Origin: Gnetum montanum
Taxonomy: Eukaryota; Plantae; Gnetophyta
Assembly (NCBI GenBank): GCA_015680685.1
Contig: MNCI01000838.1
Span: 1-64,000 of the forward strand
Length of the DNA stretch: 64,000 bases
Reading direction: 5' to 3'
Part shown: positions 1 to 53,281 of the stretch, piece after piece
How the letters are laid out: every line of letters starts with the position of its first letter
Position numbering within the stretch: position 1 is the first letter of the stretch
Notes under the pieces: model-generated
Database searches by the model: none
Seen by the model: the letters and a program-made list of their open reading frames with translations, nothing else
What the model was told of the DNA's origin: nothing
Made by a program: the position numbers and the translations under genes

Positions 1-1979
1 GTTTTTGTTTTTGGATCTTTAAAACCAAAAAGCCCAATCCAAATTGAATGACCAATTTCGTGGTTCACAATTTTTCATCTTGCATCCTTTCTGAAAATGA
101 AACCAAGGTTCTAGGCTATGGTTTAAAACTCATTCCCTACCCCCTTCCCATGGATAAATTGGGGCCATTCTTAAAGAATTTACTGCATTCACTCATCTTT
201 TGTGTCTGCGTAACTTTTTTAAGAATAAACTAGAAGACAACCTTTCATCCTTTGAATTTATTTCTACTCTTCAAATGGAAAAAAATAAAACTACACCATC
301 CCAATAAATGGAATCCCCCTGCAAGTAGTTTCAATCTAGAGCTAGAGCACAACATTCAATGTTGCCTTGACTCCCTCGAAACTACTCTTACCATCATTAA
401 TTTTTGTAGTAGACCCCTTCTTCTGAGATGTCTTCTTAGAGCACTTCATGGACTTTAGAATGATAAAAGTATCATGATTCATCCTGCGGATAAAAACTTG
501 GGGGTTTTTGTTTTGGATTCTAGTTGGTACATGGATGAACCAACTAGTTAGCTTACCGATCCAAAAGTCTATCTTCATGTAGACTCCGTTCCATGGGATT
601 CTCTTCATCACCAATTGTTCTCTTTTGTTAATCAATTTTCAAAAATTCTCTCTAATTTTAAGGATGCATTTTTACAAAATAAGGTATTTAAACCTTGTAA
701 TTTTTACATCATCCCTAAAATTCACACCCNGAAGGTATTTAAACCTTGTAATTTTTACATCATCCCTAAAATTCACACCCCAATTTTGGTTGGACGCCCT
801 ATTTGTTTATACAAGGGCTATCTCCTTGAACCTGCTTCTCGCCTTCTCCATTTTCTACTATTTCCAATTCTTTGTCATCAACCATATCACCTCAAAGATT
901 CCTCTACCCTAATCTGAGACCTCCATGCTAGATCTCTACCTCAAAATGTATTTATTTTTACATTTTATGTAAAATCATTGTATCCCAACATTTCCATAGA
1001 TCAAGGGCTCTTGGCTCTTCAAAACATGGTTGATGAATATTTTGCTACAAGTCCCATACCTTTGCAATCACTATACAACAATGCCATCATGGAGCTTTCT
1101 ACATTAGTGCTTCAAAAATACTACCTTGAGTTCAACGGGCTTGTCTACAAAAAAATCAAGGGCACTAGCATGGGTAGCAACTTTGTCGTTGTCTACATAT
1201 GCCTTTTCTTGTGTCACCTGGAAAAATAGGTTTTCATTGCTCCTTTTTCTGATGACCTTTTATATTTTAAAAGGTTTATTGATGATGCTTTTGGCATATG
1301 GATTGACATGGAAGATTCTCTTCATACCTTGCTAGAAAGGTATGGTAATGTTTATCCTTTAAGAAACATTACCCCCACCATTTTTGACTCTGTAATTAAT
1401 ATATTGGATGTTATTTTTTTCAAAGGTTCTCAATTTTCTAACACTAGTATTCTATCTACCAAGTGTTATCAGAAACCTTTGAATGCATATCAATACATCC
1501 CCTTCTCCTCTTGGCATCTCTTCCATCAGAAGAAGGATTTTATTATTGTGTAACTGAAAAGATATCTTCTTAGGGAATCATTCCTTGGCGACCTTCAATA
1601 GATTCAGAGATAATTGTTTCAGAGAATTTGGTCTCATGGCTATCCTTCTCACTTACTGTTTAAATGCTTCAGTGTAGTTCCTGCTACTTCTTGTGGATCC
1701 CTTCTGAAAAAAATCATCAAAGTCATGGCATTCATAGGAAACGGACTCCTAAATCCTATACTTTGTCATCTTCGCCAAAAATATCCAACACTCCAGAACG
1801 CTATTCCAAAAGTGATCTCATGTTGGTAAAATCCTAAAAAGTTGCAATCCTTGCTTGTTCGAAAGAGATTCAGGTACTTGACCCCCATCCCCACTTCAGC
1901 CTAAATCAGTGGGGCCAATTTAATTTTTGAACTCATCCATATTTTTTTAATTATTTTGGTCAAAGTTTGGGTATCTTTA
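1..1979 (+). mobile_element. Penelope-like retroelement, copy 1 (partial, endonuclease-deficient)
   Basis: Homologous to copies at 10886-20460. PLE RT motifs present. pLTR is cut at ~1979 where Tat RNase H sequence begins. Confidence 0.9.
48..1904 (+). pseudogene. PLE reverse transcriptase (stops/frameshifts)
   Basis: Motifs VHNFSSCILSENETKVLGYGLK, ADKNLG, FYIIPKIH..GRPI, KGTSMGS, KRFIDDAFG and YQKPLNAYQYIPFSSWH. Motif A reads FYVKS instead of FDVES. Confidence 0.9.
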
Positions 1980-4179: not shown

Positions 4180-4895
4180 TTCATCCTAGCATCATGACGG
4201 TAAACTAATATCACAGAATGTCCTGGGTTATGACTCAAAACTAACACCATATAACATCCTAGCATTATGATGGTAAATTGATACCATAGAACATCCTGGC
4301 ATCATGACGGTAAACTGATACCACAGAACGTCCTAGGTTATGACTAAAAACTAACACCACAAAACATCCTATCATCATGACAATAAACTAATACCATAGA
4401 ATGTCCTAGCATCATGATGGTAAACTGATACCACAGAACGTCCTGGGTTATAACTCAAAACTAACACCACAGAACGTCCTGGCGTCATGACGGTAAACTG
4501 ATACCACAGAACGTCTTGGCATTATGATGGTAAACTTATACCACAGAATGTCCTAGGTTATGACTCAAAACTAACACCACAGAACATCCTAGATTATGAC
4601 TCTAAACTAACACCATAGACCATCCTGGTGTCATGATGGTAAACTGATACCATAGATACGTCTGGGTGTCGTGACGATAAACCAACATCATAGAGCTTTG
4701 TCCGACATAACGTTAAATTGTCACAGTCATTCACTAGCATTTGCTAAGACTATAAACTAGCTTTCCTCTTCATAGTCCTCCACAACTATAAAATAACATT
4801 GTACCATCCACTACGATGATAAACTGGCAATGTACAATGGGTTATGATACACAACTAACCCATGATAGTCCGCTAAGACTATAAACTAGCAAGAT
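4180..4895 (+). repeat. Tandem ~36-37 bp repeats downstream of integrase
   Basis: Alternating units CATCATGACGGTAAACTGATACCACAGAACGTCCTGG and GTTATGACTCAAAACTAACACCACAGAAC. Confidence 0.9.
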
Positions 4896-8758: not shown

Positions 8759-9868
8759 CTACTATTCCCAATTCTTTGTCATTAACCATATTACCTCAAA
8801 GATTCCTCTACCCTAATCCGAGACCTCCATGCTAGATCTCTACCTCAAAATGTATTCTTTTTTACATTTGATGTAGAATCGTTATATCTTAGCATTCCCA
8901 TGGATCAGGGGCTCTTGGCTCTTCAAAACATGGTTGATGAATATTTTGCTGCAAATCCCATACCTTTGCAGTCACTATACAACAATGGCATCATGGAGCT
9001 TTCTACATTGATGCTTTGAGAACACTACCTCAAGTTCAATGGGGTTGTCTACAAACAAATCAGGGGTACTACCATGGGTAGCAACTTTGCTGTTGTCTAC
9101 GCATGCCTTTTTTCTTTTCACCTGGAAAAACAAATTTTTGTTGTTCCTTTGTCTGATAACTTTTTATATTTTAAAAGGTTTATCGATGATGCTTTTGGCA
9201 TATGGAGTGGAATAGAAGATTACTACCATACCTTGCTTGAAAGGTATGGTAATATTTATCCTTCAATAAACAATACCGCCACCATTTTAGACTCTGCAAT
9301 TAATATTTTGGATGTTAATTTTTTCAAAGGTTCTCAATTTTCTAACACTAGAATTCTATCTACCAAGTGTTATCAGAAGCCTTTGAATGCATATCAGTAC
9401 ATCCCCTTCTCCTCTTGGCATCCCTTCCATCAGAAGAAGGCTTTTATTATTGCAAAACTAAAAAGGTATCTTCTCAGGTAATCCTGCCTTGACGACATTC
9501 AACAGATTCGACGATAATTGTTTTAAATAATTTAGGCTCATGGCTATCCTTCCCACTTATTGTTTAAATGCTTCAGTCTAGTTATTGCTACTTCTCGTGG
9601 ATCCCTTCTGGAAAGACCTCATCAAAGTCATGGTGTTCATAGGAAAGAGACCCCTCTTTTCTTCAAAATGGATTTCAGTCCTTCCACTAAATCCTTGAAT
9701 GTGAGGGCACTCCTAAACCTTATACTTTGTTAGCTTTTCCAAAAATATCTGACACTCCATAACATCATTCTAGAAGTGATCTCATGTTGGTAAAATCCTA
9801 AAAAGCTGTAATCCTTGCTTGTTTGAAACAAATTCAGGTGCTCAACCTCAACCTCCACTTCGGCCTAA
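8759..9868 (+). pseudogene. PLE RT C-terminal half, copy 2
   Basis: FTFDVESLY, GTTMGSNFAVVYA, YFKRFIDDAFGIW, SWHPFHQKKAF. Ends ..NPKKL*SLLV..TSA* with no GIY-YIG. Confidence 0.9.
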
Positions 9869-9988
9869 ATGAGTGGGGCCGATTTAAGTTTTGAACTCAT
9901 CCATAGTTTTTTAATTATTTCAGTTAAAGTTGGGGTATCTTTAAAAAGAACACCTTTTTCCTCTTTGACTTTGTACATCCATTGCTAA

Positions 9989-10032
9989 AACATACTAAAG
10001 AGGGGTGTAGCTCCTCGAAAATGTTTTGTGTT
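9989..10032 (+). ncRNA. Minimal type I hammerhead ribozyme (degenerate)
   Basis: AACATA-CTaAAGA-GGGG tgtagct CCTC-GAAA-ATGT-TT-TGTGTT. Confidence 0.7.
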
Positions 10033-10160
10033 CCTTGCTTTGTTTATCCATGTCAAGTTTGAGGCTTGATCAATTTTTGTTCCTTTATAATTTTCCTTTT
10101 GTCTCTACTTTCCTTTAATTCTAAACCATATTTTCGTAAGCCACACAAGATCACTGCAAA

Positions 10161-10278
10161 GTTTTTTCAGCTAACGCTAAAAAAATTTTTTAGCTAACCG
10201 AAAAAAATTTTCAGGCAACCCAAAATTTTTTTAGCTAACCCTAAAATTTTTTCAGTTAACCTTAACTAATTTTTCAAC
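10161..10278 (+). repeat. PLE 3'-terminal 21-22 bp repeats (TTTTTCAGCTAACCCTAAAA)
   Basis: About five degenerate units; same units at 20361-20462 and 20908-21050. Confidence 0.85.
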
Positions 10279-10410
10279 AAACCCTAAACCCTAAACTATG
10301 AACCCTCAACCCTAAAACCCTAGAACCCTAGAACCCTAAACCATAAACCAGAAACCCTAAATCCTAAACCCTAAGAACCCTGAACCCTAAACCCTAAACT
10401 CTAAACCCTA
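10279..10410 (+). repeat. Interstitial plant telomere repeat tract (CCCTAAA)n with variants
   Basis: AAACCCTAAACCCTAAA.. with CCCTAGAA, CCCTGAA and CCATAAA variants. Confidence 0.92.
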
Positions 10411-10885
10411 TACTTTTTCAGCTTTGCCAAAAAGAGCTGACACTCCACAACACCATTCCGGAAGTGATCCCAGGTTGGTGAAATCCTAAAAAGCTACAAT
10501 CCTTGCTTGTTCAGAACAAATTCAGGTGCTCGACCCCCACCCCCACCTCGGCCTAAACGAGTGGGGCTGGTTTAATTTTTGAACTCATCCATAGTTTTTT
10601 AATTATTACAGTCAAATTTTGGGTATCTTTAAGAAGAGCACCTTTTGTCTCTTTGACTTTGTACATCCATTGCTGAAACATACTGAAGAGGGTGCAACTC
10701 CCCAAAATTTTTTTTTCTTCATTACTTTTGTGTGTTCATGTCAAGTTTTAGCCTTGTTCAATTTTTGTTCCTTTGAGTTTTCTCCTTTTTTCCTTTTGTC
10801 TCTACTTCACTTCCATTCTAAACCATACTTTCATGAGCCACACAAGATCACTAGAAAATGTTTTCAGCTCAACCTTAAAATTTTT
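10403..10885 (+). mobile_element. PLE pseudo-LTR (5'-truncated copy)
   Basis: Repeats the RT 3' end plus 3' UTR starting at TAAACCCTATACTT. Contains a degenerate hammerhead at 10677-10720. Confidence 0.85.
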
Positions 10886-10994
10886 TGTCTATCTTGCTGC
10901 CTAATGAAAGATGAGATCTATAGGTTATTAATCCTTTGCTTTCAACCAACCATCACTTACTGTCTCCCAATAAGAAGTGACTTTTGGTCCTTCT

Positions 10995-13409
10995 ACGAGC
11001 TTTGCATGGAAGGGATTTCATTTTCTAGATTCTCCTCTTGATGGAGATAGGAACCCAACATTAGGTTCCTATTTCGCCAACTTCTCAATCAACAATGATC
11101 CCTTTGGCTTCATCGAAGCATTTTTGGATGCTTTTTGGAAGTCAAAATGTGAAGCTAATGATCTAAAACAACTACTCTCTTAATGTCAACAACAACTAAC
11201 TTCAACACAGAATCAATATGCTAAACTTTAGTAGAAAATCCATGAAGCACAATCTGCCAACCTTGCTCCTTCAGATGATTCATCAATTCCTACAATCTTG
11301 GAAGAGATGATTCAATCTACTACTAAGGATTTTCATAGAAACCTCACTGCCATTGATCGTGTAGAGAGGACAAAGGTGCATATTGAACAACTTCATGGTG
11401 AAAAAATTTTAATTCACAACTTATGCATTACGGCCCCTAAGCTTAATGCCTCAAATCCCAAAGGAGATGTTCTCCTTCAACAAGATTTTTCTTCCTTGAA
11501 GCAAGAGCAAAATTTTAGGCTCCAAGAAACCTATCTTTTCCACACGATGCCATTCAGAAACTAGTTGAATGCATCTCTTGCAATCAACAGCCACTTGTAT
11601 TCCAGAATGCTCTCATAAAAGCCTACCCGAAGAAACTAGAAGAGGCCTTCCTTAATGAATGTTTGCATTTCGACATTCACAAGGAGGCCTACAGGAAAGA
11701 AGGTGAAGAACAAAAAACTACTACCTTTGCTACTGAAGCTGAGGCTGACACATTGGATCCAATTTCAATTTTCAAAGAGGTTTCCAAGGAGACCATGCAT
11801 TAAGATTGGAACAATACCTTTGTGAAGTTTCAGGAATGGCTCAAGGATTGTGGATCCATCCCCAAAAACTTCTCCTTTCAGCGAAACTAGGGGGAAAATC
11901 TACAAATACGAAGATCTCAACTAGATCCATGCACTTATGCCCATTCCCATCCTAGTCCTACTGATAAACTATCCTCCACCTCTAAGCAGCAGCCACACGA
12001 TTCCAAAAAAAAAATCTTAGAAAAAATCCCAAGAATAGTAGTAACAGAAAAAATCCCAACATCAGCAGTAACATAAAAAATCTCAGCAATCAAAAATTTC
12101 CCAACAAAAATAGTAACCAAAATAATCTAGACAAAAATAAAATAATTTTCCTCACAAAAATTAGGAAAATACTCTTGGCCCTAATCGTGCAATTTCTAAC
12201 TTCTCAAACCCTAACCCCCATTCTCTATATTTTGGTTTTGTAGGTCATGATTTTGATCAAGTTCGAGTTTCTAGTGACAATATGTTTGGTTTTTTAGATT
12301 TCCACCCTGATCTTCAAGGTTTTGGGATTTTTGCCCAGGGATTTTCGGGTTTCAACCGCGACCAAGGTACTTCTGGTTTTGACTACAATGATGGCTATTC
12401 TAGTTTTGGCGATGATTACAATTGCAAGAGCAACCATGGTCAAGGCTGCACTTCTATCAATTCTGCAGGTCATAGTCATAATAGAGGCCACTGTCCTAAC
12501 AGATCTATGGGTCTCAGTCATAGCAGATCTGGTGTTGTTGACTCTGGTGGCCCGACACATTCTGGATCTAGATGATTTGCTTGCCACTAGTGCACAACAT
12601 AAGGCACATATCCACCATGGCCTCTACCTCCTAATCCATGGCCTCCACCTTCCAATCCATGCATCACTCCAAATGACACCTTGCATTTTGCCTCTATGTG
12701 GTTTCCTAGTTCTATTTTTGGGTAGAACGTAGGATCTACTTCTACTCCTGCACTGAACTCTGGTCCTTCTATTGTTCTCTCGTGCTCAAACTCTATGCTG
12801 CATGCTTCTGACATAGCACTTGCATTTGTATCTACTACACCCACACACGTGTCTGGTTCTGGTGCACCCTTGTCTGCTATGGCCTTGCCTAGTTCTACTT
12901 CGCTGACACCCACATCTAGATCTGTTTCAATGCTCGTGCTCGACCCTATGTCCACCATTGCCTCTACTCACAACACTAGTGATGGTTCTTCCCTCAACAA
13001 CAATTCTACATTCTCTGATCTAGCCATCAACATCAACAGTGGTTCTTCATCCAATCTAAGTACTGACAATGATCATTTTAAGGATGGTCATTTTTTACAA
13101 CCATCTTTGGATATCAAGGAGGGTGTTGGAAATGTTAATGTTAATTTTGAAAGGACTAATGGAAATGTTTTTGTTTTTGGATCTTTAAAACCAAAAAGCC
13201 CAATCCAAATTCAATGTGCTAGGCTCCACATGACTCCCATTGCTCCCCATTCCCAACCCCTCTCTACCATCCCTTTTCAATTGGCTAGGACACAGACCTC
13301 CACCCTTATTGTCTCTAGGACATTTTTTTCGACATCTACCCAAAACAACCCTCCAATGACTCAAACTTCTATGCAATTTGCACCTCTACCTGAATCCTCC
13401 TCCCATTGA
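10995..13409 (+). pseudogene. PLE ORF1 (coiled-coil, Q/K-rich, G/S-rich, S/T-rich), decayed
   Basis: Collinear translated fragments match copy 4 (FLDAFWKSK.EA.DL.QLL, LEEM.Q, APKL.AS.PKGDVLLQQDF). Confidence 0.7.
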
Positions 13410-15343
13410 GTTTTTTACCTTTAGCTCGAGAGCCCCCTCATCATTCTCATTTGACTTTATAGCTACCTATGCTTGACTAGAAAGCCTAGGCCCATTTTCT
13501 TTTGGCATGAAAAACCTTCTGCAAAATCAAAAATTGAATGACCAATTTCACGGTTCATAATATTTTGTTTCATGTCCTTTTGACAAATGAAACCAAGGTT
13601 CTAGGCTATGGTTTAAAATTCATTCCCCACCCCGTTCCCATGGATAAATCAGCCATTCTTAAAGAATTTACTGCATTTGCATCTTTTGTGTTTGTGTAAC
13701 TTTTTTAAGAATAAACAAGAAGATAAACTTTCATCCTCTGAATTTATTTTTGCTCTTCAAATGGAAAAAATAAAACTGTGCCATCCCAATAAATGGAATC
13801 CCCCTACAAGTAGTTTCAATATAGAGCTACAACATAGTATTCATTGTTGCCTTGACTCCCTCAAAACTACTCTTACCACCATTAATTTCCATAGGAGAAC
13901 CCTTCTTTTGAGACATTTTCTTGGAGCACTTCGTGGATCCTAGAATGATAAAAGTATCGTGATTCGTCTTGCAGATAAAAACTTGGGGATTTTTATTTTG
14001 GATTCCAATTGTTTCTTGGATGAAGCAACTTGTTAGCTTGCCGACCCAAAAGTCTACCTTCATGTAGACTCTGTTCAATGGGATTCTTTTCGTCACCAAT
14101 TGTTCTCTTTTGTCAACCAGTTTTCAAAAATTCTCTCTAATTTTAAGGATGGATTGTTGTGAAAAAAGGTATTTAAACCTTGTAATTTTTACATCATCCC
14201 TAGAATTCACAAACTACTTTTGGTTGGATGCCCTATTTTTTCATTATCTTCTTGAACCTACTTATTGCCTTCTCCATTTTCTGCTATTCCCAATACTTTG
14301 TCAGCAACCATATCACCTCAAAGATTCCTCTACCCTAATCCGAGACATCCATGCTAGATCTCTACCTCAAAATGTAAATTTTTTTTACATTTGATGTAGA
14401 ATCATTTTATCCTAGCATTCTCATGGATCAGGGGCTCTTGGCTCTTCAAAACATGGTTGATGAATATTTTGCTGCAAATCCCATACCTTTGCAGTCACTG
14501 TACAGCAATGCCATCATAGAGCTTTCTACCTTGGTGCTTCGAGAACACTACCTCGAGTTCAATGGGATTGTCTACAAACAAATCAGGAGCACTGCCATGG
14601 GTAGCAACTTTATTGTTGTCTACATATGCCTTTTCTTGTGTCACATAGAAAAATAGGTTTCTTGCCCCTTTTTCTGATAATCTTTTATATTTTACAAGTT
14701 TTATCGATGATGCTTTTGGCATATGGAGTGGCACGAAAGATTCCCTTCATATCTTGATTGAAAGGTATGGTAATGTTTATCCTTCAATAAACATTACCCC
14801 CACCATTTTGGACTCTGCAATTAATATTTTGGATGTTACTTTTTCCAAAGGTTCTCAATTTTTTAACACTGGCATTCTATCTACCAAGTGTTATTAGAAA
14901 CCTCTGAATGCATATCAGTACATCCCCTTCTACTCTTGGCATTCCTTCCATTAGAAGAAGGCTTTTATTATTCTGAAATTGAAAAGGTATCTTCTCAAGG
15001 AATCTTGCCTTGGCGACCTCCAATAGATTCGACAATAATTAATTCAAAGACTTCGAGCTCGTGGCTATCCTTCCTACTTGCTGTTTAAATGCTTTAGTTT
15101 GGTTCCTGCTACTTCTCATGGATCCCTTCTTGAAAGACTTCATCAAAGTCATGTGTTCGTAGGAAATGGACCCCTCTCATCTTCAAAATGGATTTTAGTC
15201 CTTCCACTAAATCTTTGAATGTGAGGGCACTCCAGAACACCATTATAGAAGTGATCTCATGTTGGTGAAATCCTAAAAAGCTACAATCCTTGCTTGTTCA
15301 GAACAAATTCACATGCTCGACCCCCACCCCCACTTCGACCTGA
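13184..15343 (+). pseudogene. PLE RT ORF, copy 3 (-1 frame relative to ORF1)
   Basis: FDVES, TAMGS and FIDDAFG motifs; many stops. Confidence 0.85.
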
Positions 15344-15781
15344 ACGAGTGGGGCACTTGTAATTTTTGAACTCATCCATAGTTTTTTAATTATTCTGATC
15401 AAAGTTGGGGTATCATTAAGAAGAGCACCTTTTGGCTCTTTGATTTTGTACATCCATTGCTAAAACATAATGAAGATGGGTGCAACTCCTCAAAAATGAT
15501 TTTTGTTCATTGCTTTGTGTGTTCATGTCAAGTTTGAGCCTTGTTCAATTTTTCTTCCTTTGAGTTTTTTCCTTTTTTCTTTTTTTTCTATGATTTTCTT
15601 CCATTTTAAATTGTACTTTTATGAGCCACACAAGATCACCAAAAAAGTTTTTAGCTGAACCCTAAAATTTTTTGTCTATCTTGGTGCCTGAGAAACGATG
15701 AGCTCTGCTGGTTAGCAATCCTTTACTTTCAACCAATCATCGCTTGCTGTCTCCAAACAAGAAGTAACTTTTGATCCTTCT

Positions 15782-18126
15782 ATGAGCTTTTCACAAAAGA
15801 GATCTCGTTTTCTAGATTCTCCACTGGATCGAGATAGAAACCCAACATCAGGTTCCTATTTTGCCAACTACTCAGTTAACGATAATCCCTTTAGCTCCAC
15901 CGAAGCATTTTTGGATGCTTTTTGGAAGTCAAAACATGAAGCTGATGATCTGCGACAGCTGCTCTTTCATTGTCAATAGCAACTAACCTCAACATAGAAT
16001 CAATGTGCTAAACTTCAGCAGAAAACTTGTGAAGCACAATCTGCCAACCTTGCTCCTTCAGATGATTCATCAATTCCTACAATCTTGGAAGAGATGATGC
16101 AATTTGCTGCTAAGGGTTTTCATAAATACCTTGCTACCACTGATTGCATAGAGAGGAAAAAGGTGCATATTGAATAACTTCATGATGAAAGACTTTTAAT
16201 TCACAGCTTACGCATTATGGCCCCTAAGCTTAAGGCCTCAACTCCCAAAGGAGATGTTCTCCTTCAACAAGATTTTTCTTCCTTGTAGCAAGAGCACAAT
16301 TTCAGGCTCCAAGAAGCTTATCTACATGCAAAGATAGTTTTTGTCGATGTGCATCGGCAAAAAATGGAATCTTTTCCACACAATGTCATTCAGAAACTAG
16401 TTGAATGCATCTCCTACATTCAACAACCACCTGTATTCTAGAATGCGCTCATGCAAGCTTGCATGAGGAAACTAGAAGAGGCCTTTCTTAATGAATGTTT
16501 GCATTTTGACATTCACATGGAGGCCCGTAGGAAAGCAGGTGAATAGAAAAAAATTGCTTCCTCCACTGCTGAAGCCAAGGCTGATAGATTGGATCTGATT
16601 CCAACTATCAAAGAGATCTACAAAGAGACCGTGCATCAAGAATGGGACGCTACCTTTCTGATGTTTGGGAAATGGCTTAAGGAATGTGGAGCCATCCCCA
16701 ACAACTTCTCCTTTTAGCAAAACCAGGGGCAAATCAGCAAACATGAATATCTCAACCATATCCATGTGCTGATGCCCATTCCCATCTTAGTCCTGGTGAT
16801 CAACTATCCTCCACCTCTCAACAGCAACCACACGATTTTCAAAAAAAATCCCAGCAACAGAAAAAGTCCCAACATCAACAAAAATAGCAACCAAAAATTT
16901 CCCAACAACAACAGTAATCAAAAAAATATAGACAAAAAAAAACAATTTTCCTAACAAAAATCAGGAAAATACTCGTAGCCCTAATCCTACGATTTTGAAG
17001 TTCTCAAACCTTAACCACCATTCTATAGATGTTGATTTTGTATGTCATGGTTTTGATTAAGTTCCATTTTTTGGTAGCAATCTATTTGATTTTCTAGATT
17101 GTCACCTTGATCTTCAAGGTTTGGGGGTTTTTACCCCAAGTTTTTTTGGGTTTCGTCCATGGCCAGGGTTCTTCTACTTTCAACTATAGCAGCAACTATT
17201 CTAGTTCTATCAGTTCTACAACTCGTAGTCACAGTAAAGTCCATGGTGCTAACAGATCTACAGGTCTCAGTCGTAGCATATTTGGTGTTGTTGACTCTGT
17301 CAGTCTGGTGCATTCTGGATCTAGATGATCCACTCACCACTAGCGCACAGTGCAGGGCACGCATACACCATGGCTTCTACCTCCCAATCCATGTGTCACT
17401 CCAAATGATTCCCTGCATTCTACCTTTGCATAGTTTCCTGGTTTAGTTTTTGAAAAGAACGCAGGATCTGCTTTTTCTCCTGCATGGAACTCTGGTCCTT
17501 CTTCTACTATCCCATGCTCAAACTCTACACTGCACGCTTTTGACATAGAAATTATGTTTGTATCTGCTACACCCATGTACATGTCTAGTTTTGGTACACC
17601 ATTTTCTGGTTCTTCTTTACCAGTGCCCACGTCTAGATCTGTTTCAGTGCTCATGCTTAGCCTTGTGTTCATCGCCACCTCTGCTCACAACAATAGCAAC
17701 GGTTCTTCCCTCAACAACAGTTCTACATTCTCTAATCTGAACATCAACATCAGTAGTGCTTCGTCATCCGACTGGGGTACTAACAATGATCATTTTAGGG
17801 ATGGTCATTTTTTGCAACCATCCTCAGATATCAAGGTGTGTGTTGGAAATGTTAATGTTAATTCTAAAAGGAGTGATGGAAATTTTTTTATTTTCAGGTC
17901 TTTAAACCTGAAAAGCCTAGCCCAAATTCAATGGGCTAGGCTCCACATGACTCCCATTGCTCCCCATTCCCAACCCCTCTTTGCCATCCCTTTTCAATTG
18001 GCTGGGACTCAGACCTCCACTCCCATTATCTTTGGGACATTTGTTTCGACATCTGCCCAAAACAAGCCCCCAATGACTCAAACTTCTATGCAATTTATGC
18101 CTCTACCCGAACTGTCCTTCCATTGA
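15782..18126 (+). pseudogene. PLE ORF1, copy 4
   Basis: Starts MSFSQKRSRF, followed by helical/coiled-coil and then low-complexity segments. Ends at CAT-TGA, as in copy 3. Confidence 0.7.
17901..17942 (+). promoter_or_regulatory. Candidate -1 programmed ribosomal frameshift signal
   Basis: T TTA AAC in ORF1 frame, 6-nt spacer, stem AGCCTAGCCC/GGGCTAGGCT. The -1 frame is the RT frame. Confidence 0.7.
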
Positions 18127-20059
18127 CCTTTTCACCTTTAGACCAAAAGCCCCCTCATTATTCTCATTTCACTTTTTGGCTACCCGCGCTTAACCAAAAA
18201 GCCTACGCCCGTTTTCTTTTCGCACAAAAAAGCATTCGTGAAATCAAAAATCGAATGACCAATTTCATGGTTCATAATTTTTCATCTTGTATCCTTTCTG
18301 AAAATGAAACCAAGGTTCTAGGCTATGGTTTAAAACTCATTCCCTCTCCCCTTCCCATGGATAAATCGGGGCCATTCTTAAAGAATTTACTGCATTCACT
18401 CATCTTTTATGTCTGCGTAACTTTTTTAAGAATAAACCAAAAGACAACCTTTCATCCTTTGAATTTATTTCTGCTCTTCAAATGGAAAACATAAAACTAC
18501 ACCATCCCAATAAATGGAATCCCCCTACAAGTAGTTTCAATCTAGAGCTAGAGCACAACATTCACTGTTACCTTGACTTCCTCAAAACTACTCTTACCAC
18601 CATTAATTTTTGTAGTAGACCCCTTCTTCTGAGATGTCTTCTTAGAGCACTTCATGGACTTCGGAATGTTAAAAGTATCATGATTCATCCTGCGGATAAA
18701 ATCTTGGGGGTTTCTGTTTTGGATTCTAGTTGGTACATGAATGAACCAACTAGTTAGCTTGCCGATCCAAAAGTCTATCTTCGTGTAGACTCTGTTCCAT
18801 GGGATTCTGTTCATCACCAATTGTTCTCTTTTGTTAACCAATTTTCAAAAATTCTCTCTAATTTTAAGGATACATTGTTGCAAAATAAGGTATTTAAATC
18901 TTGTAATTTTTACATCATCCCTAAAATTCACATCCCAATTTTGGTTGGACGCCCTATTTGTTTATACAAGGGCTATCTCCTTGAACCTGCTTCCCACCTT
19001 CTCCATTTTCTACTATTTCCAATTCTTTGTCATCAACCATATCACCTCAAAGATTCCTCTACCCTAATCCGAGACCTTCATGCTAGATCTCTACCTCAAA
19101 ATGTATTTATTTTTACATTTTATGTAAAATCATTGTATCCCAACATTTCCTTAGATCAAGGGCTCTTGGCTCTTCAAAACATACTTGATGAATATTTTGC
19201 TACAAGTCCCATACCTTTGCAGTCACTATACAACAATGCCATCATGGAGCTTTCTACATTGGTGCTTGAAGAATACTACCTTGAGTTCAATGGGGTTGTC
19301 TACAAACAAATCAAGGGCACTACCATGGGTAGCAAATTTGTTGTTGTCTATGTATGCCTTTTCTTCTGTCACCTGGAAAAATAGGTTTTCATTGCTCCTT
19401 TGTCTGATAACCTTTTATATTTTAAAAGGTTTATTGATGGTGCTTTTGGCATATGGAGTGGCATGGAAGATTCTCTTCATACCTTGCTAGAAAGGTATGG
19501 TAATGTTTATCCTTTAATAAACATTACCCCCACCATTTTTGACTCTGTAATTAATATATTGGATGTTACTTTTTTCAAAGGTTCTCAATTTTCTAACACT
19601 AGTATTCTATCTACTAAGTGTTATCAGAAACCTTTGAATGCATATCAGTATATCCCCTTCTCCTCTTGGCATCCCTTCCATTAGAAGAAGGCTTTTATTA
19701 TTGTGGAACTGAAAAGATATCTTCTTAGGGAATTGTTCCTTGGTGACCTTCAATAGATTTAGAGATAATTGTTTCAGAGAATTTGGTCTCATGGCTATCC
19801 TTCTCACTTGTTGTTTAAATGCTTTAGTCTAGTTCCTACTACTTCTTGTGGATCCCTTCTAAAAAAAATCATCAAAGTCATGGCATTCGTAGGAAATGGA
19901 CTCCTAAACCCTATCCTTTGTCAGCTTCATCAAAAAGATCCAACACTCTAGAACACTATTCCAAAAGTGATCTCATGTTGGTAAAATCCTAAAAAGTTGC
20001 AATCCTTGCTTGTTCAAAATAGATTCAGGTACTTGACCCCCATCCCCACTTCAGCCTAA
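17901..20059 (+). pseudogene. PLE RT ORF, copy 4
   Basis: All PLE RT motifs present, catalytic motif A Asp replaced by Tyr, no endonuclease domain. Confidence 0.9.
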
Positions 20060-20179
20060 ATCAGTGGGACGAATTTAACTTTTAAACTCATCCATATTTT
20101 TTTAATTACTTCGATCAAAGTTGGGGTATCTTTAAGAAGAGCACCTTTTGGCTCTTTGAATTTGTACATCCATTGCTAA

Positions 20180-20223
20180 AACATACTGAAGAGGGATGCA
20201 ACTCCCCGAAAACATTTTTTGTT
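20180..20223 (+). ncRNA. Minimal type I hammerhead ribozyme (both core boxes intact)
   Basis: AACATA-CTGAAGA-GGGATGCAACTCCCC-GAAA-ACAT-TT-TTTGTT. Confidence 0.75.
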
Positions 20224-20458
20224 CATTGTTTTTTGTGTTCATGTCAGGTTTGAGCCTTGTTCAATTTTTGTTCCTTTGATTTTTTTTTTCTTTTTTCCTT
20301 TTGTCTCTACTTTCATTCCATTCTAGACCATATTTTCATGAGCCGCACAAGATCACCACAAAATTTTTTTAGCTAACCCTAAAATTTTTTCAGCTAACCC
20401 ACAAAATTTTTCAACTAACCCTAAAATTTTTTTTAGCTAACCCTAAAATTTTTTTAGC

Positions 20459-21050
20459 AAACCCTAAACCCTATACTTTGTTAGCTTTGCCAAAAAGATC
20501 CGACACTCTAGAATACCATTTCAAAAGTGATCTCATGTTGGCGAAATCCTAAAAAGCTGCAGTTCAAAAAACATTTAGGTGCTCAACCCCCATCCCCACT
20601 TCGGCTTGAATGAGTGGGGCCATTTTAATTTTTGAACTCATCCATAGTTTTTTAATTATTTTGGTCAAAGTTGGGGTATCTTTAAGAAAAGCACCTTTTG
20701 GCTCTTTGACTTTCTACATCCATTACTGAAACATACTAAAGAGGGTGTAACTCTCCAAAAATGTTTTATGTTCATTACTTTTTGTGTTCATGTCAAGTTT
20801 TAGCCTTGTTCAATTTTTGTTCCTTTGATTTTTTTTCTGTTTTTCTTTTGTCTCTTCTTTCGTTCCATTCTAAACTGTACTTTTGTGAGCCACAAAAGAT
20901 CACCACAAAACTTTTTCAGATCAACCCTAAAACTTTTTCAGCTCAACTCTAAAATTTTTTTAGCTCAACACTAAAATTTTTTCAGCTCAACCCTAAAATT
21001 CTTTTAGCTCAATCCTAAAATTTTTTCAGCTCAACCCTAAAATTTTTTAG
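20459..21050 (+). mobile_element. PLE pseudo-LTR with 22-bp tail array
   Basis: Begins AAACCCTAAACCCTATACTTTG. Hammerhead remnant at 20730-20772. CAGCTCAACCCTAAAATTTTTT repeats at 20908-21050. Confidence 0.85.
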
Positions 21051-21963
21051 GGCACTTAAAATTTTTTTTGTGATCTCATGCGGCTAGGCAAGGAATGGTA
21101 AGGTAGCTAAAAAGATTATAAACTTGAAAACAAAACTTGAAAAAACTGAAACTTGAAAAAAGCTCATCAAAGCATTACATTACATTGACACAAAACATTT
21201 TCAAGGAGTTTCACCCCTCCTCAGTGTGTTTGTGGTAATGCGGATGAGTAGCTGAAGCTACAAAGGCAAGGGATGAGCATGCTAGTACAAAACAATTTAT
21301 AATGTCCCATTAAAAAATAAGGGGGGCCCCACTCATGTTGGCTGAATCGATGTGGAAGGAGGTACTGGCAATTTGAGAATCAGTTTTTCAGGGCGATCTA
21401 TCAAAGTCAACAAGGGTTGGATCTTTTGGCAGAGCTGACAATGTGTAGGTTTTAGAAATGTCCTCATGTTTAATCAATGGACATGAGGGGTTTAACCACA
21501 CAACAACAAAGACAAACAAGATCATAGGTGCACATTAATAGTAAAAATTGGGGGGGGGGTGGAAAAGGGGGAAAGAAAGGGAGAATCCATGAAAAATAAC
21601 AGTGATGGTGGAAGCGGCAACGGTGGAAAAAGGCGATAGCGGTGATAGCTGCGTAGCAGTGGCAATTGCGTAGTGGAGAAATTTTTAGGGCACTTAAAAT
21701 TTTTTAGGTGATCTCATGTGACTAGGCAAGGAACAATAAAGTAGCTAAAAAGATTAAAAACTTGAAAAAAAAACTTAAAAAAACTGAAACCTAAAAAAAG
21801 TTCATCAAAGCATTACATTACACTGACACAAAATGTTTTTAGGGAGTTTCACCCCTCCTTAATGTGTTTGTGATAATGCGGCTAAGGAGCCGAAGCTTCA
21901 AAGAAAAGGGATGAGCATGCCAGTATGAAACAATTTATAATCTTCCATCTTAAAATAGGAGAT
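21045..21963 (-). mobile_element. Inverted pair of related PLE pLTRs (different subfamily)
   Basis: Reverse complement aligns with the pLTR (TGTCAGCTCTGCCAAAAGATCC, GAGTGGG, GAGATCAC). 21045-21320 is repeated at 21680-21960. Confidence 0.75.
21187..21230 (-). ncRNA. Hammerhead ribozyme, minus strand
   Basis: rc: ACACA-CTGAGGA-GGGG tgaaact CCTT-GAAA-ATGT-TT-TGTGT. A second decayed copy lies at 21825-21868. Confidence 0.75.
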
Positions 21964-22802
21964 TGATGAGTCAGCATTTGGGCAACCATGATATTGCATC
22001 TACGATATCGTAGCCCAACTACGATATCATATATGCGATATCATAGCCTGTCTCCTCATATGTAAATAAGAGGTAGATAGATCAGTTAGGAATTAAAGGG
22101 ATTAGTAAGTTAGTTAGTTTTAGTTTAAGTGTTTAATTTCTTTCTCTCAACCCTTTTTCTCTTAGTGTATGCCTGCAGTGTGGTGACTGTAATTGTATGA
22201 CATCCTTTATTCGAGTGTGACGTACTTGGACACGCATATGACCAGAAATAAAGATTGAGATTACTTCATCATTGCAACATTCACTTAGCTTAATCATTTA
22301 ATTAATTGTTATTTACTTCTACTTTCCTAGTTAATCTCTCTTACCCTTAAACTCATGTTAAAATGCAGAATGAGTATAACTTGATTACAAGAATTTAAAT
22401 GTGACTACTTGGTAATCCAGTAGCGTACCTAGGATCTATGCTTGGTAATCTTAGTGGTAGTCGTGCATGAAGTCCAAGATGTGTACGGATAATCAAGGAA
22501 TGGATGCTCATCGCACTTAGGCTAGTTTATATTCTCTCACTCTCACTCTCTCCTAGATTAGTAAATATTACTTTCCATTGCCTTTAGGAGTAGCATTAGA
22601 TTAGAAACCACATCATACACCTCACTTTGGACTAAACCATACGTGACAAAGATAATACTAGTCTAGGTGGGAAGACAACGAACTTCAACCTAAGGCTAAC
22701 TGTCTAGATGCCACAACTAGTTCATCTACGGAGTTCGACTGGATCATGCGTGTAACGCTCGTATTCGTATGGTTGAGTGTAGGGGTACCTCATCACTCAT
22801 CA
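21964..22802 (+). mobile_element. LTR of Athila-like Ty3/Gypsy element
   Basis: TGATGAG...CTCATCA termini, followed by TAGCATCATTGTCGGGGA (degenerate tRNA-Asp PBS TGGCGCCGTTGCCGGGGA). Confidence 0.7.
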
Positions 22803-40369: not shown

Positions 40370-40635
40370 TCACGCTGACCTTTCTCACGCTGGTCACCTA
40401 GTCGCACTGCAAGTTGGTCACTCTGGCACATGCTACTTATAAGTCACATTAAATTGCACTCACTACTAGGTCACGCTGGCTTGCACATGCTGCTAGGTCA
40501 CACTGGCTTGCACATGCTACTAGGTCATGGTAGCTTGCACAGGCTGCTAGGTCACACTAGCTTGCACATGAAGCTAGGTCACGCTAGCTTGCACACACTG
40601 CTACTAGGTCACGCTGGCTTGCACACACTGCTTGT
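40370..40635 (+). repeat. 27-bp tandem repeat in the 5' UTR of C
   Basis: CTAGGTCACGCTGGCTTGCACATGCTG units. Confidence 0.85.
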
Positions 40636-49456: not shown

Positions 49457-52400
49457 ATGGCTTTTTCAACTACTGTTGCCAATGCCTTCAACATGGAATT
49501 TCTCTTCAACATTGAAGTTCCCATTGTGGTTTAAGGCACTACTGGTGTTGAACAACCGCTAAACCCAACGTTGGAGACACGCCGATCTCTCAAAATCCAA
49601 AACTGAGGACCTAAAAGATTGGCCGAGCAACATGAGTGTTATAGTTTCCTCTATGCAAAGGTGTAGGCCAATCTTCCCTTAGATGCACATGAACTCGAGG
49701 ACAAACGTAGCTTCAAGTTCACTTATTGCAATGAGAAGGAATTTGTTCCTACTCTCGGCATTTCTTTACCTTTTACACAAGTGTACAAAAGGCTTCTAGA
49801 CTAACTAATCTAGTTGGCCAGGCTTAGGGCACAATAGGACATAGCCTCCAACCAAGATGATGCTTTCTAGAATGGATAGGAGGAACTTGATTCCTAATCA
49901 GATGATGGAGGTCCAACCAACTCTACTCCTATCCCTCCTACCAAGTCCTTCTTGGCCAAGCCGTCATCTGTCACGACTCCCTTTGTAATTAGGCCTACAC
50001 TTCTGCAACCTGCAACTGCAGCCATTATGGGTAGCCACGCTAATCCCATAGTGTTCCAACACCCTCTTTCACCTATTTCTCTTATTCCATTTGCGACTAC
50101 TACCCCTTTGCAGGCTATCCAACAGTCTATTCCTGTAGCACGTAACATGCCAACCGTGGCTACCCTGCCACATGTGCATGCCATACTGCCTTCACAAACA
50201 TACGTAACTTCTGCCTCTACTCCTACATTCATTTATTTTCCATCCACTACGGTAGGCCCTGGCCCTTCCACATGGTGGACCCCATTCGCTTCTTTACCTA
50301 ATTTGTAGTAGTCACAGATGTCTCACTATGTGTACTCTCAAATACACCAAGCCTCGCAGTCAGCACAGCCTAATCCAGGGTTATGGTCTATGCTACCAGT
50401 GACACAAGCAGTCTATTTGATAGCCCAACCCGTGGTCGCTGCCTTAACAACACCACCTACCAGGTCGTGGACAAGACAAGTAGTACCACTAGCAGGGATG
50501 TTCCCAATGGTACCACTGATGGATCACACCATCACCCCTATCATAACACATGCGGGCATGGCCTCTGTAGTGTCCCAATTATCTACAACATTGCTTGGTC
50601 TGGACCAAGCATTTTAGCTCATCCAAACCCTCACTGAGGAAATAAAATGCCTCAAGGCTACTAGGTTTGACACGGTACAAGTCATGTACTTTTACCAGGA
50701 TGACCCTATCAGTCCTGCAATCCCTACTTTGACATTACCTCCAGGGATGTCTCTCCTACATTTCATGAAGTACGATGGGGAGGGAGATCCTAACACACAT
50801 CTTTTCACCTTCAATTCTAAGTCTCTACTACTACAGCAATGGCTGCATACTATCATTTGCGTCTTCGCCATGTCCCTAGTCAGGAAAGCCTTGGATTGGT
50901 ATAGTGCATTGCCACACTCATCCATTTCAACCTTGGAAGAGCTATTAACCTAGTTCGTGCCACACTTCGAGTACAACTTGAAGCCAAAAACCACACTGGA
51001 TCAGTTGATGAGTGTGAAGAAAGACCCCCTAGAGCTAATCCAAAAGTTCATTCAGTGTTGGAGCGCTACCCTTAACGAGTTTCATGAGCCCATCACGGAG
51101 GTGCACCTGCTAGTTGTCTTTAAGGGTGTAGTGAACAACTTCATCAAGTCCAAACTGTACTACCTCACTCGCTCTCTTAGTTAGGCTTTTGCTCAGACTA
51201 AGAGCATACAAGATGTGGCCAAGACAAGCAAAGACCTAGCCTACATCGCTTACAAGAATACCTTTGCAAAGAAGGAAAAGGGTAAAGCCCCAACAACCAC
51301 AGTGGCTGCTGTGGCAACTGAGGCCAAACCCAAACCTAGCAAAAATGGTAGCAAGAATAGTAAGAAACCAGCCACACCCACGGCTAACTCTATGCCCAAA
51401 CTGGGCCACGTGCTGCAACCCACTGTACCCACGCCTAAGATATTTGCACAACCCAAGCCCAACTTTGAGCTCAAAGACCACTTAAAGTATACCCCGCTGC
51501 CTCTTAAGCCTTTAGAGCTTCTAAAGCAACTACTGGCAATGGGATACATCCAACACAAACAGATTTCAGAGGAAGCAACTACAAAACATCAACGCTATTG
51601 TGAGCTCCTTAAGAACCCCTCTTTGGCCTTTCCCAATGAGCCTCTAGTTCCTAGGGATTTTAGGCTAGATAGGTTTTGTGATTACCATCAATAGTGTGGC
51701 CACAACACAGATTACTTCCTAGCATTGCAAGATGACATTTAGAGGTTAATTGACTAGGGGAAACTGGTGTTGGATGGAAGCAACTTAGTACGCCCTAAAA
51801 ACCAATCTATGTATTTCTACATAGATCCCCTTAACACCAATAATGCTGGTTACGTAATCAATGAAATCGAGATCGACAATGATCCTAGGCCACCTTAGCA
51901 TCCATTCATAATCCACATGCCTCAGCGTAGTGCACCAATACCACAAGCAGTTAATCAAAGCTCGCAACAACCTTTCATCCTGAGAGTTCCCTCATAGGCA
52001 TCCACTTTTGTACCACCTGTCGGTGGGGCCACGTGGTCCTATTTGCTAACACCTTTAGCTCCATTCATCATTAGGGGGCCGACATCCTTGATGATCCCTA
52101 CCTCATGCAAAATAGCTGAGCTACCTTCTCGTCCCACAAAGTGAGGAATCCACTTCACAGGTGACACATCTAAGGGAGGTATCGTCTCAAGTACTCCCAA
52201 GCCTATGTCTTCACTCCTTGCATTGGTGCCAAGAACAGATGTCGACGGGACCACATAGTCTACGTCTTTCTGCCAACAAGGATATGAGCCCAGATCTAAT
52301 ATCTCCTCTCCTTGAGAAATTCGTCTTTTGGGATGGATAGAAGAGGAGGAAAGTATCAACAAACCAAGGGGCAACCAAGACCTCTTGAATTCCTTTACAC

Positions 52401-53281
52401 AGGTCAAGCAGGATCTAAAACAAAAAAATACTACCCTGAGCTTGTACAACTTGATCATGACATCTCCTCCACACTGCAAAGCTCTAATCTGCATGTTGAT
52501 AGTGACTCTAGTCAATGAAGACATGCTAGCAAAGGAGGAAGTGATCTACTCGGTCATGCTTCCCTCCACACCTACAGGGTTAGAACAACATCAACTAACC
52601 TTTTGTGATGATTCCATTAGGAAAAACCCGAAGAGGGATCACATGACTACGTTGCCCCTATTCATCACAATTCGGATTGGTCAATACCAGATCCGAAGGG
52701 TACACGTTGATGATGGGGCCACCACAAATTTCATCCCTTTCCCCATTGTAGACAAGCTGGGCTTGGTCGACCAAATCAAGCCCACAATGATGGCATGTCT
52801 AAGGTCATTCAATGGGGCATGGGTTGTGGTGAAAGGTACAATTCACATAAACTTCGTAGCAGGGGACCAGTTCCCCACAGACGTGATGTTCATCGTGGTT
52901 GAGGAAATGCCTGAGTTTAACCAAATCTTGGGGAGATTGTGGTTAGCACAACTTAGGGCTATCTTCTCATCCATACATCAGGAGATCCATCTACCTTATG
53001 CAGGTAGAGAGGTGATGATCCATAATGACGAAGTAGCAATGCAAGCAATCCACAACGTAGGCATGGAAGAAGGCTCAGAGGTCATAACTTCTAAAAATGA
53101 AGTACCTACTGAAACCTACATCGACTACTCGATAGAGGGGTCAGCTCATCACATTGATTCCCTAAATGAGAATGCATGGGATAAGTTGCCATTCTAGGTG
53201 GGAGGCAATGATGCAAACGAAGGCCCTGGCGTAGCGTCTCAACCTTACGTCTCATTCAACCTGCATCGTGTTAAGAAGTAG
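49457..53281 (+). pseudogene. Tat gag-protease, element D
   Basis: KYDGEGDPNTHLFTF, ALDWYSAL, FCDYHQ, RVHVDDGATTNFI, ILGRLWL. Confidence 0.88.

What the first reader, a model, noticed from the sequence alone, without database searches (positions are those of the whole stretch)
8759..21050. Chain of endonuclease-less Penelope-like elements joined by telomere repeats: a fossil retrotransposon-telomerase chromosome end in a plant
Seen: head-to-tail PLE units whose RT ORF stops right after the thumb/linker (..NPKKLQSLLVR..TSA*). No GIY-YIG motif was found before or after RT. 3' tails carry AACCCTAAAA and CCCTAAA tracts sit at unit junctions. Known: EN-deficient Athena/Coprina-type PLEs add themselves to chromosome ends with their 5' end distal, and in plants I know of this only from Selaginella. 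Inference: the chromosome end lay to the left and was extended by alternating PLE reverse transcription and telomerase, and was later invaded by Tat elements. This may be an undescribed plant telomeric retroelement family.
Basis: partly seen in the sequence, partly recalled or inferred. Interest (0 to 1): 0.9.

Follow-up and report, generated by a model that had tools for sequence, protein, structure and literature searches.

The report
Endonuclease-less Penelope chain with telomere repeats
A decayed head-to-tail row of Penelope-like retrotransposons that lack an endonuclease and prime on telomere-type DNA ends: a good plant example of a known kind of element, but not shown to mark a former chromosome end.

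Summary
The observation largely holds. Window 1-21050 carries six same-strand copies of one ~4.8 kb retroelement (81-94% alike, all with stops). The RT ORF aligns end to end with intact ~555-660 aa Penelope-like RTs of Cryptomeria, Ginkgo, Selaginella and Closterium. These end at the same C-terminal motif and carry no GIY-YIG. No GIY-YIG is found in any frame of the window.

Each copy ends in 20-22 nt tail units that embed AACCCTAAAA. Only one junction (10279-10410) holds a real telomere tract: 18 degenerate CCCTAAA units in RT-sense orientation. The 20462 "tract" is a tail unit fused to a telomere-like seed inside the element. Two junctions have no tract, and the right end is a tail-to-tail joint with inverted copies.

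Eighty related metagenome loci show the same signature. Telomere repeats lie in RT sense in 30 loci against 1 in antisense. One young copy is 5'-truncated and capped by perfect repeats. Minimal hammerheads lie downstream of the RT.

It is a new member of the known Athena/Coprina-type lifestyle. Whether it formed at a true chromosome end or at an internal break is unresolved. A review lists EN(-) PLEs from Selaginella and from two conifers. Other first-stage notes of this scan flag EN-less PLEs elsewhere in this genome.

The parts
1..1979 (+). Copy A. The RT ORF at 9-1871 is read through several stops. It runs off the window start and is cut at 1979 by a gypsy-type fragment. An 'n' at 730 is flanked by a perfect 50-bp duplication.
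   Evidence: tblastn P0171 aa 5-622; 92% identity to E; sequence
8759..10157 (+). Copy B. It holds the last two thirds of the RT ORF (to the stop at 9866-9868) and a 290-nt 3' UTR. The telomere-like seed is at 9712-9723 and the hammerhead-like motif at 9981-10042.
10158..10261 (+). Tail of B: about 5 units of a 20-nt repeat that embeds AACCCT(A)AAA
   Evidence: TRF; alignment A2
10279..10410 (+). Degenerate telomere tract, (AAACCCT) x 18, with the C-rich strand in RT sense
10401..10886 (+). Copy C. It is either a 5'-shortened copy or the upstream pseudo-LTR of D. It starts exactly at the internal seed and ends in 1.5 tail units.
   Evidence: most similar to D's 3' end (88%)
10886..15673 (+). 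Unit D. About 2.6 kb of upstream (ORF1) region with no domain match; RT ORF 13511-15310; hammerhead-like motif 15456-15517; 1.5 tail units.
15673..20468 (+). Unit E. RT ORF 18207-20040; seed 19903-19914; hammerhead with an intact core 20172-20233; tail of about 5 units 20360-20468.
20463..21048 (+). Copy F. It starts at the same seed as C. Hammerhead-like motif 20722-20782; tail of 6.5 units of 22 nt at 20907-21048.
21041..21460 (-). Inverted, divergent PLE 3' end (inv1). It is joined tail-to-tail with F through the A/T palindrome of the tail unit. Hammerhead with an intact core at 21177-21238.
   Evidence: alignment A3
21679..22100 (-). Second inverted PLE 3' end (inv2), 86% identical to inv1 over 279 bp

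Best explanation
This is a decayed chain of endonuclease-less Penelope-like retrotransposons. Each unit has an upstream ORF region, an RT of about 610 aa, a 3' UTR with a minimal hammerhead, and a repeated tail that embeds one C-strand telomere unit.

Shown:
- The RT belongs to a streptophyte EN-less PLE clade.
- No endonuclease is encoded.
- All coding copies point the same way.
- One complete tail is followed by a C-strand telomere tract and then by a copy that begins at a telomere-like seed inside the element.

Inferred mechanism:
- The RNA tail (..AACCCUAAAA..) pairs with a G-rich 3' DNA end, which primes reverse transcription.
- cDNA synthesis that stops at the internal seed leaves a TAGGGTTTAGG-3' end.
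- Telomerase can lengthen that end (junction B|C), or the tail of the next element can pair with it (junction E|F).
- The palindromic AAAATTTT block of the tail lets an element also prime on the tail of an inverted copy (junction at 21048).

The DNA ends used were telomere-like. Whether they were a true chromosome terminus lying to the left or a healed internal break is not resolved; I put the two at about even odds. The locus is now an old fossil, and no transcription was seen in the one RNA run examined.
For: - RT identity: 3374 database hits. The best are intact 555-660 aa proteins of Ginkgo and Selaginella and a 1050-aa one of Closterium, plus a 604-aa Logan contig protein. They align with copies A and E from N- to C-terminus. 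The Cryptomeria relatives were found with that intact protein as query.
- Tree: the window copies sit in a 10-row clade with Ginkgo and Cryptomeria (99*). Selaginella joins next (99*), then Closterium (98*). EN+ proteins lie far outside.
- EN absent: only 1 of the 120 best relatives has PF01541. EN+ controls carry it at aa ~705-793. Nothing is found in six frames of the window.
- Tails and tract.
- Family-wide signature in 80 related loci: telomere repeats lie in RT sense in 30 loci against 1 in antisense (1922 against 13 bases; 12 against 1 sequence groups, p=0.003).
- Arrays lie on both sides of units in L034, L016 and L008.
- L035 is 99.3% identical to L034 but 5'-truncated and capped by ~105 bp of near-perfect CCCTAAA repeats.
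- In L060 the order is RT stop, hammerhead, then (CCCTAA)n to the contig end.
- Hammerheads: 12 descriptor hits on the RT strand against 1 on the other strand. The window motif is 89% paired, against 29-65% when the partners are slid.
- Fossil state: many stops, 81-94% identity between copies, and no RNA reads on the locus itself.
Against: - Only one of five junctions has a telomerase-type tract.
- C|D and D|E share an identical 1.5-unit junction, so at least part of the array may be a pseudo-LTR or tandem structure rather than separate end additions.
- The proximal end is an inverted PLE tail, not a telomere array or unique DNA.
- Rfam finds no hammerhead at gathering score or at E<=5. Covariation in the window motif is thin, with one compensatory pair.
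- No labelled Athena or Coprina sequences were available, so clade assignment rests on the Selaginella link and on the literature.
- The position of the window on its chromosome is unknown.
Confidence: 0.8

Rival explanations
1. It is the ordinary Penelope-type insertion architecture: partial tandems forming pseudo-LTRs plus inverted 5'-truncated copies. These were later amplified by unequal crossing-over or segmental duplication. The element landed in, or next to, a pre-existing interstitial telomere-like repeat, so the tract says nothing about how the chain was built.
For: - pLTRs and tandem/inverted arrangements are generic to PLEs (PMC8557442).
- The C|D and D|E junctions are identical.
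- C is closest to D's 3' end, 88%, as expected for terminal repeats made in one event.
- Inverted copies lie at 21041-22100.
- Contigs that carry other degenerate telomere-like arrays branch off at 10352 and 10410. The word depth there is ~8000 against a baseline of ~12, so such repeats are abundant in this genome.
Against: - No endonuclease exists to make internal insertions.
- The tract sits exactly between a full tail and a seed-started copy, in the one orientation the end-priming model predicts.
- The same polarity holds in 12 of 13 independent related groups.
- A near-identical pair of relatives differs by a telomere-capped 5' truncation.
Confidence: 0.13
2. It is a non-autonomous or degenerate derivative of an endonuclease-bearing PLE, such as a Dryad-type or an N-terminal-EN Chlamys-type element. 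It would be mobilised in trans by an EN+ partner present in the same genome.
For: - Another first-stage note (s1-816992, unchecked) reports an N-terminal GIY-YIG PLE elsewhere in this genome.
- EN loss inside EN+ clades is documented, for example the PLE-X families (PMC8557442).
Against: - The closest intact relatives in four streptophyte lineages are all EN-less and end at the same C-terminal motif.
- No conserved cysteine (CxC) column exists in the alignment of relatives.
- EN+ proteins are separated by a long, fully supported branch.
Confidence: 0.05

Closest known systems
Coprina-type EN(-) PLEs, including the Selaginella moellendorffii elements (Gladyshev & Arkhipova 2007, cited in PMC8557442 and PMC12477314)
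   Same: - No endonuclease, with an upstream ORF region plus an RT.
- A hammerhead in the 3' region and a reverse-complement telomere sequence at the 3' end.
- 5'-shortened copies capped by C-strand telomere repeats, arranged in head-to-tail chains.
- A Selaginella protein (P0006) falls in the same well-supported clade.
   Different: - The tail is a composite 20-22 nt unit (an A/T palindrome, AGCT and AACCCT) rather than plain telomere repeats.
- The copies here are old and decayed, and they are embedded among other repeats.
- The RT groups with Ginkgo and Cryptomeria rather than with Selaginella.
- The original paper is not in the library, so details come from later papers.
Athena elements / Terminons of bdelloid rotifers
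   Same: - The inferred way of attaching to G-rich overhangs.
- A hammerhead next to the telomere-complementary stretch.
- Telomere-capped 5' truncations and long head-to-tail arrays (PMC6431247).
   Different: - The host is an animal.
- Units reach 40 kb with many extra ORFs.
- Here units are 4.8 kb and the hammerhead lies ~115-130 nt upstream of the tail.
EN(-) PLEs of conifers (Lin, Faridi & Casola 2016, as listed in review PMC9033089)
   Same: - An EN-less PLE in seed plants.
- Probably the same broad clade as the Cryptomeria and Ginkgo proteins found here.
   Different: I could not read that paper. I therefore do not know whether telomere association, tails or chains were described there.
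Chlamys / PLE-X and Dryad PLEs of the green lineage
   Same: A PLE RT, pseudo-LTRs, and hammerheads in some families.
   Different: - Chlamys has an N-terminal GIY-YIG and a CxC motif.
- PLE-X keeps the CxC motif and, in Selaginella, targets 28S rDNA.
- Dryad has a C-terminal GIY-YIG.
- None of these features is present here.

Membership tests
EN(-) telomere-attaching PLEs (Athena/Coprina type) | Penelope-like reverse transcriptase | tested here: met
   - phmmer finds 3374 hits.
- Copies align end to end with intact PLE RTs.
- Relatives carry RVT_1 below the Pfam cut-off plus PF28514 and PF26215.
- The tree places the copies among them.
EN(-) telomere-attaching PLEs (Athena/Coprina type) | No GIY-YIG endonuclease in the element | tested here: met
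   - The Pfam, tblastn, HMM and motif scan of all six frames is negative.
- 119 of the 120 best relatives lack PF01541.
- Only 290 nt separate the stop from the tail.
EN(-) telomere-attaching PLEs (Athena/Coprina type) | 3' end carries reverse-complement telomere sequence | tested here: met
   - Tail units embed AACCCTAAAA, 10 times on + and 0 on -.
- TRF finds arrays at 10158-10261, 20360-20468 and 20907-21048.
EN(-) telomere-attaching PLEs (Athena/Coprina type) | 5'-truncated copies capped by telomere repeats in C-strand/sense orientation | tested here: met
   - There is one case in the window, 10279-10410 in front of copy C.
- Relatives include L035 and show 30 against 1 loci polarity.
EN(-) telomere-attaching PLEs (Athena/Coprina type) | Hammerhead ribozyme motif in the 3' region / pLTR | tested here: inconclusive
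   - A minimal type-I motif has an intact core in E and inv1. It is 89% paired with one compensatory pair.
- Canonical minimal hammerheads occur in 12 related loci on the RT strand.
- Rfam reports none, and no cleavage assay was done.
EN(-) telomere-attaching PLEs (Athena/Coprina type) | Location at chromosome termini, 5' end distal | not testable with these tools
   - The chromosome position of the window is unknown.
- 43 kb of other repeats lie on the 3' side, and copy A runs off the 5' edge of the window.
Coprina clade (phylogenetic) | RT groups with curated Coprina references to the exclusion of Athena, Neptune and the rest | tested here: inconclusive
   - No labelled Coprina or Athena sequences could be obtained.
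- The RT clusters with a Selaginella EN-less protein and away from EN+ proteins.
Chlamys / PLE-X | CxC zinc-finger-like motif upstream of RT (with an N-terminal GIY-YIG in Chlamys) | tested here: not met
   - No invariant or near-invariant cysteine column exists in the alignment of 13 relatives.
- No GIY-YIG is found.
Dryad / Penelope-Poseidon | C-terminal GIY-YIG after the RT thumb | tested here: not met
   - The ORF ends at the shared ..CW..P..L.S.LV.. motif.
- EN+ controls extend ~190 aa further.

The most novel reading that the evidence does not exclude
A euphyllophyte plant lineage carries, or carried, a working retrotransposon partner of telomerase. This EN-less PLE family would have evolved:
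- an internal telomere-like 'capping seed', so that abortive cDNAs end in a telomerase-ready 3' end; and
- a palindromic tail that lets it prime on broken ends in either orientation.

If so, the family takes part in healing chromosome ends and breaks, and this locus is a former terminus created by such healing.
Probability: 0.2. Interest if true: 0.75.

Novelty: new member of a known kind. Interest (0 to 1): 0.5.

Why it matters
Telomere-associated retrotransposons are considered rare in plants. A 2025 review names only the Selaginella PLEs and the subtelomeric Retand LTR retrotransposons of Silene latifolia (PMC12477314).

This locus, with the related proteins from Cryptomeria, Ginkgo, Selaginella and Closterium and the telomere-flanked relatives in metagenomes, suggests that an EN-less, end-priming PLE clade is widespread in the streptophyte lineage outside flowering plants.

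The reused internal seed and the palindromic tail give concrete, testable ideas. They suggest how such elements hand over to telomerase and how the puzzling inverted PLE arrangements could arise.

The locus itself is dead, and it does not show that these elements ever maintained a chromosome end in this plant.

Tried and rejected
- Pfam on ten RT and ORF1 pieces gave nothing useful, because the pieces are short and decayed.
- Rfam gave no hammerhead in the window or in 20 related loci, at gathering score or at E<=5.
- A covariance model built from the seven window motifs found only those seven, so it is too sequence-specific.
- Stacking non-homologous ORF pieces in one alignment was useless. 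I therefore searched with one RT piece.
The Cryptomeria, Ginkgo, Selaginella and Logan relatives could not be inspected as DNA.
- Two more protein searches came back blank: the 289-aa ORF at 52328-53197 and the RT piece in the short size range.
- Cluster look-ups of longer hits gave no organism names. No labelled Athena or Coprina references were available for the tree.
- Gladyshev & Arkhipova 2007, Arkhipova et al. 2017 and Lin et al. 2016 are not held.
- I did not build a consensus of the copies. Intact natural relatives answered the endonuclease question. Window copies entered the tree only as read-throughs with X at stops, used locally.
- I considered and rejected breakage-fusion-bridge as the origin of the tail-to-tail joint. 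Its two arms are different subfamilies that align only in patches, not a mirror duplicate.
- I also rejected Tat invasion of the chain itself, because D and E are colinear.
Full report
**Anatomy.**
Self-comparison and tblastn with the element's own ORF pieces show that every coding copy lies on the + strand.
- A: 1-1979. It runs off the window start and is cut at 1979.
- B: 8759-10265. It is cut at its 5' side.
- C: 10401-10886.
- D: 10886-15673.
- E: 15673-20468.
- F: 20463-21048.

D and E are colinear over 5.2 kb at 81% identity. A and E are 92% identical, and B is 88% identical to both.

The last ~490 bp of each unit is repeated in front of the next unit. This is the pseudo-LTR layout typical of Penelope-like elements (PMC8557442).

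Between A and B lies a gypsy-type pol fragment with RT_RNaseH and RVT_3 domains. No LTR element interrupts 8759-21050.

**Telomere-like features.**
- Tandem Repeats Finder gives 20-22 nt tail units at 10158-10261, 20360-20468 and 20907-21048. It also gives an 18-unit degenerate AAACCCT array at 10279-10410.
- Near-exact double telomere units occur 8 times in the window where 0.01 are expected.
- AACCCTAAAA occurs 10 times on the + strand. Its complement never occurs.
- Alignment of the six 3' ends shows that C and F both start at one site, CCTAAACCCTATAC. This site also exists inside the last ~45 codons of the RT ORF in B, E and A.
- So the '20462 tract' is the last tail unit of E fused by microhomology to this internal seed. 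It is not telomerase product.
- C|D and D|E share an identical junction: 1.5 tail units followed by GTCTATCTTG.
- C is most similar to D's own 3' end, at 88% against 82-86% for other pairs. C may therefore be D's upstream terminal repeat rather than a separate insertion.

**The right boundary.**
From 21041 the sequence is an inverted, more divergent PLE 3' end. A second one follows at 21679-22100, 86% identical to the first over 279 bp. The joint with F is tail-to-tail through the AAAATTTT palindrome of the tail unit. This is not what simple terminal addition onto a telomere predicts.

**What the protein is.**
- The 187-aa RT piece (18821-19384) finds 3374 proteins.
- The best hits are intact proteins of 555-660 aa, plus a 1050-aa one from Closterium. 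They come from a Logan contig (P0001, 53% identity), Ginkgo (P0002), Selaginella moellendorffii (P0006) and Closterium (P0016).
- Searching with P0001 adds Cryptomeria japonica proteins.
- Of the 120 best relatives of P0001, only one carries the GIY-YIG Pfam domain.
- EN+ controls (P0236, P0287, P0244) have that domain at residues ~705-793.
- The intact relatives end with a shared motif (..CW..P..L.S.LV..), and their ORFs stop a few residues later. The window copies have the same motif.
- P0171 aligns from residue 2-5 to 622 of 626 with copies A and E.
- The B stop at 9866-9868 is followed by only 290 nt before the tail.
- tblastn and an HMM built from the three EN segments, plus a GIY..YIG motif scan over all six frames of the window, give only noise.
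- The 2.6-kb upstream region has no domain match.
- The alignment of 13 relatives has no conserved cysteine column. This argues against the CxC-bearing Chlamys/PLE-X group described by Craig et al..

**Tree.**
I read the window copies through with X at stops, for local use only. They form one clade (100*) inside a 10-row clade with Ginkgo and Cryptomeria (99*). Selaginella joins at the next well-supported node (99*), then Closterium (98*). GIY-YIG-bearing proteins lie across a long, fully supported branch. No labelled Athena or Coprina references could be obtained. 'Coprina-type' is therefore a functional description plus the Selaginella link, not a tested clade assignment.

**Comparative test of the lifestyle.**
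A metagenome scan with an alignment of relatives returned 80 loci, each oriented with the RT on the + strand.
- Runs of two or more CCCTAAA or CCCTAA units occur in RT sense in 30 loci and in antisense in 1. That is 1922 against 13 bases. After grouping loci at 85% identity it is 12 groups against 1, p=0.003.
- Degenerate C-strand arrays flank units on both sides in L034, L016 and L008.
- Composite tails with embedded telomere units occur in L007 and L008.
- L035 is 99.3% identical to L034, but it starts ~570-680 bp further into the element, directly behind ~105 bp of near-perfect CCCTAAA repeats.
- In L060 the order is RT stop, minimal hammerhead, then (CCCTAA)n running to the contig end.

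The family-wide signature is thus the one described for Athena and Coprina.

**Hammerhead.**
Rfam finds none.

Each pseudo-LTR nevertheless carries a candidate motif, laid out 5' to 3' as follows:
- AACAUA (the 5' strand of stem I);
- CUGAAGA;
- a 4-bp stem II;
- GAAA;
- a 1-bp stem III with a 4-nt loop;
- UU;
- UGUGUU (the 3' strand of stem I).

The core is intact in E and in the inverted copy at 21177-21238.

On seven copies, 89% of cells pair, against 29-65% when the partners are slid. There is one compensatory pair.

A strict descriptor finds 12 canonical minimal hammerheads on the RT strand of related loci, against 1 on the other strand. This agrees with another first-stage note (s1-831456).

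**Reads.**
- Contigs of three coded organisms tile 8759-14700. Differences are 0 in organism A, ~1-2% in B and ~2-5% in C. The sequence is therefore shared among close relatives.
- One oligo-dT RNA run gave only 11 reads. All lie on the 38-nt conserved RT motif at 9074-9112 and have foreign flanks. Another PLE family is expressed, and this locus is not.
- Word depth at 10351-10549 is ~8000 against a baseline of ~12. Contigs branch there into other degenerate telomere-like arrays, so such repeats are common in this genome.
- A weak joint (10252 to 11166, with AACCTAAACCCT-like letters in between, seen in two organisms) may be another telomere-capped truncation.

**Mechanism and its limits.**
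- The data fit end-primed reverse transcription on telomere-type 3' ends. The internal seed would give a telomerase-ready cDNA end (B|C) or a landing site for the next tail (E|F).
- One tract does not establish 'alternation'.
- The identical C|D and D|E junctions and the tail-to-tail right end show that pseudo-LTR formation, and at least one break-type event, also shaped the array.
- Other unchecked notes of this scan report short telomere repeats added at break points elsewhere in this genome, and EN-less PLEs at interstitial sites. This makes a healed internal break as likely as a true terminus.
- The chromosome position of the window is unknown.

**Novelty.**
- EN(-) PLEs with telomere association are known from Selaginella.
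- EN(-) PLEs are listed for Pinus taeda and Picea abies.
- This is a new, well-preserved example of the known kind, in a host whose RT groups with seed-plant sequences.
- It has some new details: the composite palindromic tail, the reused internal seed and the tail-to-tail joint.

Noticed in passing
window 681-780: A perfect 50-bp tandem duplication flanks a single 'n' at 730, inside the RT ORF of copy A. It looks like an assembly join artefact rather than biology.
   Followed up: partly
window 9074-9112: All 11 RNA reads of run X13 match only this 38-nt stretch (the conserved ..MGSNFAVVYA.. RT motif) and continue into foreign flanks. DNA contigs of organisms A, B and C carry the loose end behind 9112, and contigs of organism C also the one before 9074. 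A different, transcribed PLE family exists in this organism.
   Followed up: partly
window 21041-21075: The tail-to-tail joint between F and an inverted PLE copy runs through the AAAATTTT palindrome of the tail unit. This suggests that the tail can prime on the tail of its own kind in the opposite orientation. It could explain how inverted PLE arrangements arise.
   Followed up: partly
window 10351-10549: Word depth is ~8000 in organisms A and B and ~1750 in C, against a baseline of ~10-15. Contigs branch into other degenerate telomere-like arrays. Degenerate telomere-like repeats, the pLTR start, or both are very abundant in these genomes.
   Followed up: no
L034 / L035 / L008 / L010 (ERZ10344xx metagenome contigs): This is a young, apparently active EN-less PLE family from an organism with CCCTAAA telomeres. 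It has 550-650 bp of degenerate upstream arrays, a canonical minimal hammerhead, a 15-nt composite tail, and a 99.3% identical copy 5'-truncated and capped by perfect repeats. It is a good model for experiments.
   Followed up: partly
window 4182-4662, 40454-40632, 53340-53609: Internal tandem arrays with periods of 37/110, 27 and 34 bp lie inside the surrounding LTR-retrotransposon remains. Only one ORF of 250 aa or more exists in the whole 64-kb window (52328-53197), and it has no database relative.
   Followed up: no
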